Shown here: positions 10,092 to 57,700 of the stretch, piece after piece
Layout: each line of letters begins with the position of its first letter
Position numbering within the stretch: position 1 is the stretch's first letter
From: Dendrobates tinctorius
Lineage: Eukaryota
NCBI RefSeq assembly: GCF_039654945.1
Contig: NW_027361754.1
Coordinates: 8,866,001-8,930,000 of the forward strand
Direction of reading: 5' to 3'
DNA: 64,000 nt
Made by a program: the position numbers and the translations under genes
Notes under the pieces: model-generated
What the model saw: only the letters and a program-made list of their open reading frames with translations
Database searches by the model: none
What the model was told of the DNA's origin: nothing

Positions 10092-10150
10092 TTACTGCCT
10101 TCGATCTTCCGCCTCTGACCTGGAGAACGCCATCACCACATCCTCAGCAC
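10092..10150 (-). CDS. CTNNBIP1: CTNNBIP1 last coding exon
   Basis: (G)AEDVVMAFSRSEAEDRRQ-TAA after acceptor tctcttgcag; phase 1 matches the upstream exon. Confidence 0.95.
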
Positions 10151-13100
10151 CTGCAAGAGAAAGATGGAAGGTAAAAACTGAAGAAAGATTCATCGTTGGG
10201 AGCGTAGTTGATTCTAAGAAATGTCAGCCACGACCATTGTGTGATGTCATCTGTTAGATATCCCCAATTCTGACTGATGGTTTGTAATAGTAAGATCCAG
10301 ACAGGGACTGAAATGCATCAGCGTTGGGTTTGCATATGGAACGCGACTTCTGTCTCCCGTGTAAAACTTTGAGGAGCCATGTGCTTGGTGTCATTTAATG
10401 CTGGTTTTATAAAGCGACAAATATTGTGTCGGCTAAAACTTGCAATGTGTGTAGTGTCATGGTGAATGTGGCCAGTTTGCAGTCGCAAAGAATCCAAACC
10501 TGCAGGATTTTTTTCTGTAGGGCGCGCCTGCTTGCATTAACCTGGCACGATGCGACCACACTCATGCACCTTAAGCTTTGATGCTTGCCTCATGTGTCGT
10601 GACCAAAGTCGCCATGTTGCCCAATGCCAGATCCCTTACAGATCAATATTTTATAGATGCAAAAAAAGAAAACACAAATTGCATCTGAGTCGCGGTCACA
10701 AGCAACTTACACCGGGGATAAAAGCTGCAAAAATTTCACAAGGAATTACAGTTGTGGATCGTAACGTGGCACCACGACCGCGCACGTAACGATTGTCAAA
10801 TGGGAAGATTGTCATGTCTGTCGCCTTGTCCTTAAGCCACAGACACGCTGAGCTCTGCTACATCAGCTTTTATGGTATATTTTGTGCATAGGATGCCTGC
10901 ACTACGTAGAGATGATAGGAGCCATGACAAGGCCCATCTCTGAGCAGCAGCACAGCGTAGTTTCTTGTTTTTTTCTTTTTATAGCCGCTATGCCAATTAA
11001 CATGCCCGACTGCAACCACCTTCAACGCCAGAGAAATGAAATTCACATCGTATCAAAGAGCCGCGCAACTTCTCTGCGGCTTTGTATTTCAAGCTGTGTG
11101 TGCGCCGACAGTTGAGGGGATGTGCCAAGAACCAGCACTTTAATAATCCCCCATCACAATCCTACAGGAGGCTGCCTCCCTTACCAGCAGAGCGAGGAGA
11201 CCGCTCTCTTCAGTTACCATGGCGACGGATGGATAAGCCGGGAGGGCACGGAAAGCTGCAGGTTGACGTTTGGATACCTAATGAGGACGGAGAATTACAG
11301 AGGATTCAGCAGACGGCCTGATTAATGCGCCACAGTGACTCGAGCGCCAGGCAAGATTGTGGGTACATCTCCGGGAACATCACCGCTGCCGCCGGCAGAG
11401 TTCCTTTATAAAACAAGTTGCCCTTCTCATCCAGAGCCTCCTGGTTCATAAATATAAAGCCTGCTCTGACCTTCAGGCATATGATCAAAATTAAGGGAAG
11501 GTGCAATACAGAAAATTACACGCCATTTGGCTGTGGAGGATATAATGGCGTCTCTTAGTACTTACTACTTTCTGCACCACCTTATGGCTGGTAAATAGGT
11601 ACACCAAAGATTTGGGTTGAAAATGTTGCAAAATGTTAATACATTGGGAGCTTTTATGACTCTGGGCAGCAGAGCCATCTTCATCTTACAGGAAAAGAAA
11701 AGGCGTCAGTATCACGTAACACTTTTGGTCTTACACTTGCTTTCAATACAACCTCGAGCATTCCTGCTGTCACTACAACTCCCAGCATCTGGAAACTCCT
11801 CATGCCGGGGCCGGGCTTCTATCCCAGAGTCACAAAAATGCAATAATCTGAGGTGTAACCTCAGCCTGTAGTCACCAGGCAGACACGGATTAGAGTGCAA
11901 GCTCCTCTGCATCCAACATGTGGCTTGTATACAACTGGAGATTATGTTGGCCGGGGAAGGACTGCTCATCTCGCTACAGTGAAATAGCACAGAAAGAGGA
12001 CTTAAAAATCCTCCAATAATAGAAAACAGCAAAAGAGCAGAAAGGTTTACCCGTCCAGGCCTCCAGACAAATGCACTATCAGGATACAGTGGACCCATAT
12101 AATTAAGATGGCAACACAGGTGCAAGAATACCGATGAAACAACCGCTCACAGCCTACCAATTCATGGAGGGGGCGGCTGCCTGGAATGTTAATGCACAAT
12201 AAAACACTTGCATGCGGCGCTGTTCACACTATGGCCATGCACAGCATCCAGGCCAGCCTAGTAGTGACACCCTTCTATTAGCTCAGGAGACCTTTGGCGC
12301 AGGTTGCGGGCTCACGTATTTTGGCCAAAATATCAGCTAAAACTCCACATTTTTTAATGTGTTTTTTGTCTGGCAGCCTGGACAGGTAAACCTTTTTGCT
12401 CTTTTGCTGTCATCTCGCTACAGCCAAAAGTTGGGACCAGGATATTGCAAGCCATACCCATTAAATGCAAACCTAAGGCCATGGTCAGACTTTGCGGATT
12501 TGTAAAAAAAAAAAAATAAAAAAATAAAAAAAAAGGCAAATTTGAAGATTTGAAGAAATTTACATTAATGTACTTGTTGACAGGTTTTCAAAACCCCGCT
12601 CACATGCAGCAGAAATCTGAGCACGCTCATTCTTGTGCCTAAATGTGGTGGATTTTACCATTTGCATTGGGCGGTATCCGCTAAAAGCAGATTTGTGGAA
12701 AACAATCTTAAGCACTTTAAATCCAAAAGGAAAAAGAATTGCTCATTTGTTCCGGTCGGATCCACTCCTGTGAATGAAGCCCGACCTGTACAATCTCCTA
12801 CGTGACAGACCCTCGGTGGCAGCAATAACCCGGGAGAAGACGTGCGTGCGGTATACTACTGGCAATGCACAAAGCTGTGAAGGTGCAGAACGTGAAGAGG
12901 CGAGTGACAGGTCCTCCCACACCGCCACCACCTACACCCGACACGCCATCTGCTTCATTTCATTTTTTTACAAACTTTCATCCAACAAGACTATTTATAA
13001 CATCTGAGCTAATCACATGCTGGAAAGGTAAAATGATGAATTTTTTTGCGGAATTGTATAAAAAAACCTGAGGTTTTTTTTTTTTACATTCATTACATTT

Positions 13101-54700: not shown

Positions 54701-57700
54701 ACCGGGGCGCCGAGAGCGGGGGGGGCCGCGATTGGGCGCCGGTGCACCGCCGCTGTCGTTAAGTCAGCGCTTCTCACGGGGGCAGGACCCGACCGCATAC
54801 CTCCACTCCTATGCTCAGGCAGGTCGTCACTGTCCGGGGGCTTCCAGCTGCAGGTGTGTGTCTCATCCTCCGGGCGATGTAGCAGAGCTGGAGGAGGTCT
54901 TAAAGGGTTATTGCTCAGTCAATCCACCCTGTGGTAGGGGGAAGGAGAGCTCTGGGGCTGATTCAGGGCATCCGAAAAAGGGCTGCTCAAGTCCTCTCCA
55001 TGCACTCCTGTGCTTCGTCCTGTTGCGCTTGCCCTCATATCCGTGGAGTACCAACCGTAAGGGAACCATCGTCAGAGGAATCAGCCTCATTCGTCGCAGG
55101 AAAGTGTACGGGGAGGTATACTCAGCGTGCTTGCCCTTTGTTGGTTCGGGGGAGAGCGAGCTGTAGAAAGGAACCGTCGCCCCCTTCACTCCGTTAATTA
55201 AAAACTAAAAATTTACAGAAAATTCAAAAATAAAATAAAAACGATGGGGTCTGAAACCAGACCCAAGTACCTCCTACAGACACTAAGCAAAGAACTGGAG
55301 AAATCTCAGCCAGCGAGAGGGTGTATACTGCAGGGGAGGAACTAACTTTTTTTCTGGTTTACTTAGTGTCCTCCTAGTGGCCAGCAGCATAACACCCACT
55401 GTCTCTGTGTCCCCCAATGAGGCGTAGGAGAAAAGTTGGTCACACTCATCAAACACTATGTTTGACGAGTGTGACCAACCTGTCAATCCGTTTTACAAGC
55501 GATGTTACAGATCGCTTGGAAAACGCTAGCATTCTGCAAGCTAATTACAATATGCTAGTTTTTCACGGGAATTCCGCATGCGGATTTCCCGCGGAAATTT
55601 CTGTGGCAATTCCACACGTGTGCACATAGCCTAACTCTTCCTGCAGCGCCCCCTCTGACGTCTGACAACCAGTGCCCTGTGCGACCGCACACAGGTAAGG
55701 CCAGTCATGTCAGAACGTATCATTCACGTGTCATATTCATTGGCATGTGTGATATCATTCAGTGAGGTGCTTTAGGCGATTATTAAATCTGGCCATACAC
55801 TAGAACTGAACGCTCACGCGTCCGTTAACTATTCTTCCTTGGTCTTCCCTCCTTCCACCAATCATATGCCTGCTTGGTTCAGACAGTGACTTATCTCCCT
55901 CAAGACCTAAGTATCGATCATGTTAAAATTCAATTTGTCCCTTTTGCCACTTTTAAAACAAAATCAGCATTGGATTAAAACAATAATATACGTTATGATT
56001 TACCTAATCCGTCTGACACCTTCTGAAACTGGCTGAGGGCTGCACCTGCATTCTCTGCTAAGAAAGCCTCATCCTCTGGAGTCAACTAAACAGAAAAAAT
56101 GATGGAATGAGTTTTAATATTTATAATTTATCAACCAGAAATCCCAGAGTCCTCAAATCCCACACATAAACATTAGATAAGATTCTGTCTGCAGCCACCA
56201 CTAAAGGGCCCTTTACACAAAGCGATATCGCTAAAGCGTCACGGATTTTGTGACGCAGCAGCGATATCGCTACTGATATTGCTACATGTGATACTCACCT
56301 CCGACCCGGCTCCCCGCAGGCTATTGCTGATTGTGCGAGATCGGCCTGGTCCATTTCTCGTCGTCGGCTTCCTGCTGGCGCCGACGAGCGAGCCATGGAC
56401 GCAGATGGAAGACGGTCACCCTTGCCGCGTCTGAAAGGTAAGAGCGACCGCTACTGCATCGCTAGTGAAATCTGCCTGTTTGGCTGCTCACTAGCGACCA
56501 TTTAGCGATGCACCAGCGATCCTGACTGGGTCGTATCGTGGTCGGGATCGCTGGTGCATCGCTAAATGTAAAGGGGCCTTAAGGGGAGCGCTCTGTATAC
56601 AGAGACACATGATAAGATTCTGTCTGCAGCCACCACTAGAGGGAGAGCTCCCAGTATACAGAAATACATAAGATCCTGTCTGCAGCCACCACTAGAGGGA
56701 GAGCTCCCAGTATACAGAGATACATGATAAGATCCTGTCTGCAGCCACCACTAGGGGGAGCTCCCTGTATACAAAGATACATGATAAGATCCTGTCTGAA
56801 GTCACCACTAGAGGGAGAGCTCCCAGTATAAAGAGATACATGATAAGATCCTGTCTGCAGCCACCACTAGGGGGAGCTCCCTGTATACAAAGATACATGA
56901 TAAGATTCTGTCTGCAGCCACCACTAGGGAGAGCTCCTTGTATACAAAGATACATGAGAAAATTCTGTCTGCAGCAACCACTAGGGGGAGCTCTCTGTAT
57001 ACAGAGATACATGATCCTGTCTACAGCCATATACTATATAATTATCTTTAGACATTTCACCTTCTCTCCCAGTTTCCGCAGTGCGGTCAGGATTTCTCCT
57101 TTCTGCTGAGTGTAAACATCTTGGGCTAATTTTCCCACCATTAGATCTCGGTCCATCTGTAAAATGAGACAAAATACCTAATTGTAGGAGGTCACGTATC
57201 ACATTGTCAGCATTTTTTGGAAACAATCTGTGAGAAAACCCAATGACTAGTCCTCTACCATTTTAGCCTTAATTATGAAGAAAATTAAAATTCTCTCTCA
57301 CCTCGGATAACCTTGTCCTCAGCTGCCCCGGCTGCTTCTTGGCAAACATCCTGATGACCTCCGGGGTCTTGAACGCTTGGCTGATTGCTGCTTGAATGGC
57401 CTCAAAGACAAAAGGGGCTGTAATATATGAAACTATGACACAGAGAGAGCGCACTATGGCTGCTGCGCCCACTGCAAACTACAGTGGGTACAGAAAGTAT
57501 TCAGACCCCTTAATTTTTCATTCTTTGTTTCATTGCAGCCATTTGTCAAATTCAAAAATGTTCATTTTTTTCTCATTAATGTACACTCTGCACCCCATCT
57601 TGTCTGAAAAAACAGAAATGTAGAAATTTTTCCAAATGTATTAAAGAAAAACTGAAATATCACATGATCATAAGTATTCAGACCCTTTGCTCAGTATTGA

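What the first reader, a model, noticed from the sequence alone, without database searches (positions are those of the whole stretch)
10092..57156. CTNNBIP1 looks like a tandem duplicate of the last three LZIC exons (96/91/59 vs 96/82/59 nt, same phases)
Seen: LZIC coding exons 4-6 are 96, 82 and 59 nt. CTNNBIP1 coding segments are 96, 91 and 59 nt. Both have introns in phase 0 then phase 1, at aligned residues: MDRD..QQK..L..LRKLGEK|[14 protein letters not shown]| versus MNRE..QQK..L..LRKMGSN|LTPSEEAFL..YAG..QG|. Each terminal segment is 59 nt to the stop. The ICAT start Met corresponds to the internal Met at the first base of LZIC exon 4. The genes are adjacent and co-oriented. Known: LZIC carries an ICAT-homologous domain. 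Inference: the Wnt inhibitor ICAT arose by tandem duplication of the LZIC 3' half, using an internal exon-initial Met as its start and gaining a new promoter (~35 kb). This genome keeps the full intron fingerprint.
Basis: partly seen in the sequence, partly recalled or inferred. Interest (0 to 1): 0.75.

Follow-up and report, generated by a model that had tools for sequence, protein, structure and literature searches.

The report
ICAT born from LZIC's 3' half
In this frog the small Wnt inhibitor gene CTNNBIP1 (ICAT) lies just downstream of LZIC and shares its last two intron positions, which supports the idea that ICAT arose in early vertebrates as a tandem copy of LZIC's last three exons; the two genes were already known to be related.

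Summary
On the minus strand, LZIC coding exons 4-6 are 96, 82 and 59 nt. The CTNNBIP1 coding segments are 96, 91 and 59 nt. All have AG/GT borders, and the intron phases are 0 then 1 in both genes.

The two N gaps lie in non-coding DNA between the genes and touch no exon.

- **Exon pattern elsewhere.** The LZIC pattern 101/136/99/96/82/59 is identical in amphioxus and gar. ICAT is 96/91/59 in elephant shark and medaka.
- **Age.** Full-length LZIC occurs across eukaryotes (Dictyostelium, Hydra, metamonads). Every named ICAT hit came from a jawed vertebrate.
- **Gene order.** The co-oriented LZIC-then-ICAT order also holds in elephant shark (19 kb apart) and vole (about 50 kb).
- **Tree.** ICAT groups with vertebrate LZIC (support 97/96), on a very long stem.

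Not settled:
- whether the duplication was partial, or whole-gene followed by 5' loss;
- whether lampreys or hagfish have ICAT;
- where the ICAT promoter lies (the "~35 kb" guess was not tested).

The homology is published; their linkage in human I know only from memory. No held paper states this origin, so I rate it a well-documented example of a known process. The scan's notes hold no earlier finding on these genes.

The parts
59726..59826 (-). LZIC coding exon 1 (101 nt, from the ATG; the following intron is phase 2)
   Evidence: same size as in amphioxus and gar.
59497..59632 (-). LZIC coding exon 2 (136 nt)
   Evidence: AG acceptor, GT donor.
57302..57400 (-). LZIC coding exon 3 (99 nt; ends ...TRLSE; the following intron is phase 0)
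57061..57156 (-). LZIC coding exon 4 (96 nt). Its first codon is the internal Met and it opens the ICAT domain.
   Evidence: Pfam ICAT profile positions 1-32, 54.5 bits.
56004..56085 (-). LZIC coding exon 5 (82 nt; ends in phase 1 inside a Gly codon)
   Evidence: Pfam ICAT profile positions 33-57, 30.4 bits.
48651..48709 (-). Coding part of LZIC exon 6 (59 nt including the stop; translates G|[18 protein letters not shown])
   Evidence: identical to the C-terminus of P0122.
18042..18154 (-). CTNNBIP1 first coding exon: a 17-nt leader (18154-18138) plus 96 coding nt from the ATG at 18137. It encodes the beta-catenin contact residues Y15, K19 and V22.
   Evidence: Pfam ICAT profile positions 1-32, 39.6 bits. 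Residues from PMC5342195.
17788..17878 (-). CTNNBIP1 second coding exon (91 nt; ends in phase 1 inside a Gly codon; carries the 9-nt insertion relative to LZIC exon 5)
   Evidence: Pfam ICAT profile positions 33-57.
10092..10150 (-). Coding part of the last CTNNBIP1 exon (59 nt including the stop; G|AEDVVMAFSRSEAEDRRQ*). It holds the D66/F71/E75 peptide that binds the beta-catenin groove.
   Evidence: 100% to P0086. Residues from PMC5342195.
11213..11278 (-). Alternative last coding exon of the annotated ICAT isoform X1 (P0060). It replaces the beta-catenin-binding tail.
   Evidence: 100% tblastn match to P0060 residues 63-84.
25521..25703 (.). Assembly gap 1, in non-coding DNA between LZIC and the ICAT ATG exon
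   Evidence: its left flank is a Tc1-like end.
29041..29178 (.). Assembly gap 2, in non-coding DNA; abuts a Tc1 transposase 3' end

Best explanation
CTNNBIP1 (ICAT) is a DNA-level tandem duplicate of the last three coding exons of LZIC.

[quoted passage not shown] In chordates its gene has six coding exons of 101/136/99/96/82/59 nt.

On the vertebrate stem, or at the latest before jawed vertebrates radiated, a segment carrying exons 4-6 was copied just downstream of the parent, in the same orientation. Alternatively the whole gene was copied and its 5' exons were later lost.

Exon 4 of chordate LZIC begins with a Met codon, and this became the ICAT start codon. The two internal introns were inherited unchanged (phase 0 after domain codon 32; phase 1 in a Gly codon). 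The intron upstream of the ATG exon is probably the descendant of LZIC intron 3, with its acceptor now 17-25 nt further upstream. New non-coding 5' exon(s) and a promoter were recruited.

The copy then diverged fast, with a stem of about 1.5 changes per site. It gained a 9-nt insertion in the middle exon and became the 81-residue beta-catenin/TCF inhibitor. Since then it has been almost frozen, at roughly 85-95% identity between shark and frog.

Shown here: exon sizes, phases, intron co-location, age polarity, conserved tandem order and tree position. Inferred: the duplication mechanism, reuse of the Met, descent of the 5'UTR intron, and promoter recruitment.
For: - Exon and phase identity in the window.
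- Same Pfam profile coordinates on both sides of intron 1.
- On one alignment, the ICAT introns of elephant shark and medaka fall in columns 150 (phase 0) and 188 (phase 1). These are the same columns as amphioxus and gar LZIC introns 4 and 5.
- The LZIC structure 101/136/99/96/82/59 is already present in amphioxus.
- LZIC is found across eukaryotes (PMC6527300; PMC2959043).
- The 243 ICAT-type clusters have only jawed-vertebrate names among those listed. PMC5342195 calls CTNNBIP1 vertebrate-specific.
- Co-oriented LZIC-then-ICAT order: in the window 30.5 kb apart; in elephant shark 19.2 kb apart with no gene between, on overlapping loci; in prairie vole about 50 kb apart.
- Xenopus tropicalis locus tags are consecutive: 18563 for ICAT and 18564 for LZIC.
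- No ICAT-like exon lies within 10 kb downstream of amphioxus LZIC.
- ICAT is most similar to vertebrate LZIC (35-39%), then amphioxus (34%), then Hydra and protists (16-28%).
- {ICAT + vertebrate LZIC} is a clade with 97/96 support.
- The exon-initial Met is found in chordate LZIC; non-chordates have I, L, V, Q or other residues there.
Against: - The AU test does not reject a tree in which amphioxus and vertebrate LZIC form a clade that excludes ICAT (p = 0.21). An earlier chordate origin with later loss therefore stays possible.
- The tree rests on 81 columns, and eight long rows were left out. With them included, Hydra intrudes and support falls to 92/95.
- Cyclostomes and tunicates were not examined.
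- No relic of LZIC exons 1-3 lies upstream of ICAT, so partial and whole-gene duplication cannot be told apart.
- In medaka, PIK3CD lies directly upstream of ICAT with no LZIC between, so adjacency is not universal.
- Adjacency in the window crosses two assembly gaps.
- The phase-0 intron is also present in Dictyostelium LZIC. That position alone does not date anything.
Confidence: 0.8

Rival explanations
1. The whole LZIC gene was duplicated in tandem, and the downstream copy later lost coding exons 1-3 and its promoter. The duplication did not begin as a 3'-half copy.
For: Tandem whole-gene duplication is the commoner event. The end state is identical, and nothing tells the two apart.
Against: tblastn found no relic of LZIC exons 1-3 between 48651 and 18154. 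After more than 400 My none would be expected, so this is weak evidence.
Confidence: 0.3
2. ICAT is older than vertebrates. It was duplicated from LZIC in an early chordate or deuterostome and then lost in amphioxus and other invertebrates.
For: The AU test does not reject a chordate LZIC clade that excludes ICAT (p = 0.209). The long ICAT stem makes its placement uncertain.
Against: No ICAT-type protein from outside jawed vertebrates appears among the named hits. The best tree puts ICAT with vertebrate LZIC at 97/96. There is no ICAT exon downstream of amphioxus LZIC.
Confidence: 0.1
3. ICAT is an ohnolog of LZIC from the vertebrate whole-genome duplications, or a retrocopy, and the two became neighbours secondarily.
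For: The timing (vertebrate stem) coincides with the 2R duplications.
Against: A retrocopy would have no introns, yet both internal introns are kept. Ohnologs lie on different paralogons, whereas here the genes are adjacent and co-oriented from elephant shark to mammals.
Confidence: 0.03
4. The polarity is reversed: LZIC arose by fusing an ICAT-like gene to a coiled-coil exon set.
For: None beyond the shared domain.
Against: Full-length LZIC with both halves exists in Amoebozoa, Metamonada, Euglenozoa, Cryptista, Breviatea and Cnidaria. ICAT does not.
Confidence: 0.01

Closest known systems
LZIC / CTNNBIP1 paralogy (Katoh 2001, Int J Mol Med 8:611, PMID 11712074; Pfam PF06384, ICAT domain)
   Same: The same two genes. 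LZIC is described as an ICAT-homologous protein with a leucine zipper (title as cited). From my own memory, unverified here, that paper also reports the two human genes clustered tail-to-head at 1p36.2.
   Different: The paper is not in the held library. No held paper states the intron-phase match, the amphioxus exon structure, the pan-eukaryotic versus vertebrate age contrast, or a partial tandem duplication origin.
Truncated single-domain regulators that evolved from larger proteins by duplication (microProtein-type regulators such as Id/HLH proteins). This comparison rests on general knowledge, not on a test here.
   Same: A short protein that keeps one domain of a larger ancestor and acts as a competitive inhibitor.
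   Different: ICAT does not target its parent. It competes with TCF/LEF for beta-catenin (PMC5342195). LZIC is reported not to bind beta-catenin (PMC6527300 citing Clements and Kimelman 2005).
ICAT-beta-catenin complex structures 1LUJ and 1M1E, as described in PMC5342195
   Same: The window's ICAT keeps Y15, K19 and V22 in coding exon 1 and D66, F71 and E75 in coding exon 3. The helical domain and the groove-binding tail therefore map to separate exons.
   Different: Frog LZIC has Y, K and I, and D, L and E, at the aligned sites. The aromatic residue of the consensus peptide is missing.

Membership tests
ICAT domain family (Pfam PF06384) | Match to the profile above the 25-bit gathering score | tested here: met
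   LZIC exon 4 scores 54.5 bits, LZIC exon 5 scores 30.4 bits and ICAT exon 1 scores 39.6 bits, each on its own. ICAT exon 2 scores 17.8 bits alone, but at the expected profile positions 33-57.
CTNNBIP1 (ICAT) orthologue | About 81 residues in three coding exons, near-identical to annotated vertebrate ICAT | tested here: met
   exons are 91%, 97% and 100% identical to the Bufo ICAT P0086. Exons 1-2 are identical to D. tinctorius P0060.
CTNNBIP1 (ICAT) orthologue | Beta-catenin contact residues Y15, K19, V22 and D66, F71, E75 | tested here: met
   Read from the exon translations against the residues named in PMC5342195. Binding itself was not assayed.
LZIC orthologue | About 190 residues; N-terminal coiled coil plus C-terminal ICAT domain; six coding exons | tested here: met
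   Exons are 101/136/99/96/82/59 nt. Exon translations are identical to D. tinctorius LZIC P0122.
Tandem (segmental) gene duplicate | Shared intron positions and phases within the homologous region | tested here: met
   columns 150 (phase 0) and 188 (phase 1) in both families.
Tandem (segmental) gene duplicate | Adjacent, same orientation, and conserved in distant lineages | tested here: met
   Window (30.5 kb, across two gaps); elephant shark 19.2 kb; vole about 50 kb. Exception: in medaka the gene directly upstream of ICAT is PIK3CD.
Tandem (segmental) gene duplicate | The parent is older than the daughter, and the daughter is nested within the parent's tree | tested here: met
   LZIC is pan-eukaryotic. 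{ICAT + vertebrate LZIC} has 97/96 support. Nesting relative to amphioxus is not significant by the AU test (p = 0.21).
Partial (3'-half) duplication specifically | Evidence that exons 1-3 were never copied | not testable with these tools
   No relics were found upstream of ICAT, but none would survive this long.
Retrogene | No introns in the region homologous to the parent | tested here: not met
   Two inherited introns are present.

The most novel reading that the evidence does not exclude
ICAT may be a cleanly datable case of a signalling inhibitor made on the vertebrate stem from the C-terminal half of a pan-eukaryotic protein. All three of its introns, including the 5'UTR intron, would be inherited from LZIC. 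The tail of vertebrate LZIC (D-x-hydrophobic-hydrophobic-x-L-x3-E) would already have carried the spacing of the beta-catenin groove motif. Very few changes, such as L to F, would then have been needed to create a TCF competitor.
Probability: 0.35. Interest if true: 0.45.

Novelty: new member of a known kind. Interest (0 to 1): 0.3.

Why it matters
It gives a concrete origin for a vertebrate-specific brake on Wnt/beta-catenin signalling, with a date and a mechanism. The brake is a truncated tandem copy of an ancient gene whose own function is still poorly known.

This suggests simple experiments. One is to test whether LZIC residues from the internal Met onward bind beta-catenin. Another is to find which tail residues convert LZIC into an ICAT-like inhibitor.

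It also gives annotators an exon-phase signature (96 / 82 or 91 / 59 nt; phases 0 then 1) for telling the two genes apart.

It does not change the understanding of either gene's present function, and the paralogy itself was already known.

Tried and rejected
1. **RNA contigs.** I laid the contigs of four likely RNA runs (not on record as RNA) on the CpG-island-like stretch 25704-27840 to find the ICAT first exon. The stretch is repetitive, with a 30-nt GC-rich minisatellite at 26966-27330. Only short multi-copy contigs lie on it, and their loose ends do not map within the window. The promoter was not located.

2. **Large profile search.** I included the LZIC N-terminus in the profile, so the 150 proteins shown were all LZIC-like. 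Stand-alone ICAT-type representatives ranked below the cut. The search therefore says nothing about short ICAT proteins outside vertebrates.

3. **Papers.** Katoh 2001 and Clements and Kimelman 2005 are not held.

4. **N-terminal extensions.** tblastn with the N-terminal extensions of Xenopus ICAT models, meant to find a 5' exon, gave nothing.

5. **10-kb flanks.** The flanks downstream of LZIC in amphioxus, gar and elephant shark hold no ICAT exon. For the shark, the ICAT look-up was needed.

6. **No DNA served.** The D. tinctorius and Mobula loci came back without DNA.

7. **Intron 5 ORFs.** ORFs at 50-54 kb in LZIC intron 5 have no Pfam match.

8. **Earlier notes.** The scan's notes hold nothing on LZIC, CTNNBIP1 or ICAT.

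No human contig was fetched or compared, and no N was filled.
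Full report
**What is in the window**

Both genes lie on the minus strand.

LZIC has six coding exons:

| Exon | Coordinates | Size |
|---|---|---|
| 1 | 59826-59726 | 101 nt |
| 2 | 59632-59497 | 136 nt |
| 3 | 57400-57302 | 99 nt |
| 4 | 57156-57061 | 96 nt |
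| 5 | 56085-56004 | 82 nt |
| 6 (coding part) | 48709-48651 | 59 nt with the stop |

CTNNBIP1 (ICAT) has three coding segments:

| Segment | Coordinates | Size |
|---|---|---|
| 1 (from the ATG) | 18137-18042 | 96 nt |
| 2 | 17878-17788 | 91 nt |
| 3 | 10150-10092 | 59 nt with the stop |

Every acceptor is AG and every donor is GT. In both genes the first of the two compared introns is phase 0, and the second is phase 1 inside a Gly codon.

One refinement: the ICAT exon that carries the ATG begins 17 nt upstream, at 18154. In LZIC the acceptor abuts the ATG.

**The gaps**

The two N runs (25521-25703 and 29041-29178) lie between the LZIC stop and the ICAT ATG exon.

No exon, splice site or frame touches a gap. 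What does depend on the gaps is the 30.5-kb spacing and the scaffold join between the two genes. The window alone cannot prove either.

**Independent confirmation of the exon models**

Exons were searched by reference.

Pfam's ICAT model puts LZIC exon 4 and ICAT segment 1 both on profile positions 1-32. It puts LZIC exon 5 and ICAT segment 2 both on positions 33-57. The phase-0 intron therefore falls between the same two profile positions in both genes.

Word searches with the open frames around ICAT exon 1 and LZIC exon 1 returned annotated proteins. The LZIC isoform X1 and ICAT isoform X1 of Dendrobates tinctorius (P0122, P0060) match the window's exon translations exactly. So the window is that frog or a very close relative, and NCBI's spliced models use the same junctions. 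The last ICAT exon is 100% identical to the Bufo ICAT P0086.

**Is the coincidence inherited?**

I mapped exons of annotated proteins on their own genomic loci:

| Species | Gene | Coding exon sizes (nt) |
|---|---|---|
| Amphioxus | LZIC | 101/136/99/96/82/59 (phases 2,0,0,0,1) |
| Gar | LZIC | 101/136/99/96/82/59 (phases 2,0,0,0,1) |
| Elephant shark | LZIC | exon 4 = 96; first three introns as above |
| Vole | LZIC isoform that skips exon 3 | 101/136/96/82/59 |
| Elephant shark | ICAT | 96/91/59 |
| Medaka | ICAT | 96/91/59 after a 24-nt N-terminal extension |

On one multiple alignment, the ICAT introns fall in columns 150 (phase 0) and 188 (phase 1). These are exactly the columns of LZIC introns 4 and 5. 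MAFFT places the 82 versus 91 nt difference as one 3-residue indel inside the exon. The chance expectation for two independent introns is about 3e-5.

The LZIC pattern thus predates vertebrates, and ICAT carries a subset of it.

**Polarity and age**

A profile search of 1.84 billion representatives found 1760 relatives.

Named examples of full-length, roughly 190-residue LZIC come from many lineages:
- Dictyostelium
- Amoeba
- Palpitomonas
- Pygsuia
- Barthelona
- Blattamonas
- Petalomonas
- Hydra
- two insects
- amphioxus

Two papers agree. PMC6527300 mentions nematode and slime-mould sequences. PMC2959043 lists a ctenophore Lzic/Icat gene whose best hit is LZIC.

ICAT-type proteins formed 183 and 243 clusters in two searches. 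Every named one among those listed was a jawed vertebrate, from elephant shark and rays to mammals. PMC5342195 calls CTNNBIP1 vertebrate-specific.

LZIC is therefore the parent. Cyclostomes could not be checked.

**Linkage**

- **Elephant shark.** LZIC ends at 9,468,068 and the ICAT ATG is at 9,487,292 on scaffold MU249855.1. Both are on the plus strand, no gene is called between them, and the two fetched loci overlap.
- **Prairie vole.** Both genes are on the minus strand of one scaffold, about 50 kb apart, with LZIC upstream.
- **Xenopus tropicalis.** The locus tags are consecutive. This supports the join across the window's gaps from a second frog assembly.
- **Teleosts.** Stickleback, Cottoperca and Scleropages have both genes on contigs of identical length.
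- **Medaka is an exception.** PIK3CD lies directly upstream of ICAT. In elephant shark PIK3CD lies directly upstream of LZIC. This would fit loss or relocation of LZIC from that teleost region.
- **Amphioxus.** There is no ICAT-like exon within 10 kb downstream of LZIC.

**Tree**

I built trees on the 81 kept columns of the ICAT domain.

ICAT is one clade (100/100) on a stem of about 1.5 changes per site. Its terminal branches are very short. With all 37 rows, the group {vertebrate LZIC + ICAT} has 92/95 support, but the long Hydra row intrudes.

I then left out eight long rows: Hydra, Bemisia, Menopon, Petalomonas, Barthelona, and the unnamed rows 269, 270 and 288. With these removed, {ICAT + vertebrate LZIC} has 97/96 support, with amphioxus outside.

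The AU test does not reject amphioxus plus vertebrate LZIC as a clade without ICAT (p = 0.209). An earlier chordate origin remains possible.

Identity tells the same story. ICAT is 35-39% identical to vertebrate LZIC, 34% to amphioxus, and 16-28% to Hydra and protists.

The Met that opens exon 4 is a chordate feature of LZIC. Other lineages have I, L, V, Q or other residues there, and Xenopus tropicalis has L.

**How it most likely happened**

A DNA-level tandem duplication placed LZIC exons 4-6 downstream of the parent. The exon-initial Met became the start codon, and the two internal introns were inherited.

The 5'UTR intron in front of the ATG exon has its acceptor 17-25 nt upstream of the ATG in frog, medaka, shark and vole. 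It is plausibly the old LZIC intron 3 with a shifted acceptor.

The copy then changed quickly and was frozen. The beta-catenin contacts named in PMC5342195 map to exon 1 (Y15, K19, V22) and exon 3 (D66, F71, E75). Frog LZIC has Y, K, I and D, L, E at the aligned sites. LZIC is reported not to bind beta-catenin.

A partial duplication cannot be told apart from a whole-gene duplication with loss of the 5' exons. No relic of exons 1-3 lies upstream of ICAT. A retrocopy or an ohnolog origin is contradicted by the retained introns and the conserved tandem order.

**What was not achieved**

The ICAT promoter and first exon were not located. The CpG-rich stretch at 25.7-27.5 kb is largely a 30-nt minisatellite, and contigs of the four likely RNA runs gave no clean exon there. 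The region near 35 kb lies next to an 88-nt satellite and was not tested.

**Novelty**

The homology is published: Katoh 2001 is cited but is not held. From memory only, that paper also notes the tail-to-head clustering in human.

Six literature searches found no held paper that states the origin of ICAT from LZIC or the intron match. I therefore treat this as a well-supported new example of a known process, of modest interest.

Noticed in passing
L009:2001-2670 (Dictyostelium purpureum LZIC): The gene's only intron is at CDS offset 432, phase 0 (LGFA|ISPE). This is the same alignment column and phase as chordate LZIC intron 4 and the first ICAT intron. The position is therefore either very ancient or was gained twice.
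   Followed up: partly
L008:3001-3567 (Hydra vulgaris LZIC): Hydra LZIC has no introns (567 nt for 188 residues). Whitefly LZIC (L010) shares only the first two chordate intron positions. It has another intron one base away from the phase-1 site.
   Followed up: partly
window 26966-27330: A GC-rich minisatellite with a 30-nt unit (about 11 copies). It makes the stretch score as a CpG island (GC 0.6, observed/expected about 1) and attracts very deep multi-copy contigs in public runs.
   Followed up: partly
window 32560-34791: An 88-nt tandem array with about 18 copies at 98% identity, plus related 125-162-nt periods, in the LZIC-ICAT intergenic or 5' region.
   Followed up: no
window 57720-58733 (minus strand): A Tc1/Sleeping Beauty-type transposase remnant (HTH_SB, HTH_Tnp_Tc3_2, DDE_3) inside LZIC intron 2. 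Both assembly gaps also abut Tc1-like ends.
   Followed up: partly
window 11213-11278 (minus strand): The annotated ICAT isoform X1 of D. tinctorius (P0060) uses an alternative last exon here. This replaces the beta-catenin groove-binding tail with an unrelated 21-residue end.
   Followed up: no
L002 (medaka) and L003 (elephant shark): PIK3CD lies directly upstream of, and co-oriented with, ICAT in medaka and LZIC in elephant shark. This suggests an ancestral order PIK3CD-LZIC-ICAT, with LZIC missing from this medaka region.
   Followed up: partly
P0273 (Osmerus mordax, 151 aa) and P0241 (420 aa): These database models contain two ICAT-domain or two LZIC stretches in one protein. They may be lineage-specific tandem copies fused by annotation.
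   Followed up: no
window 50001-55000: CpG-rich windows and several 170-215-residue minus-strand ORFs in the 7.3-kb LZIC intron 5 have no Pfam match. Their nature is unknown; they may be a decayed mobile element.
   Followed up: partly
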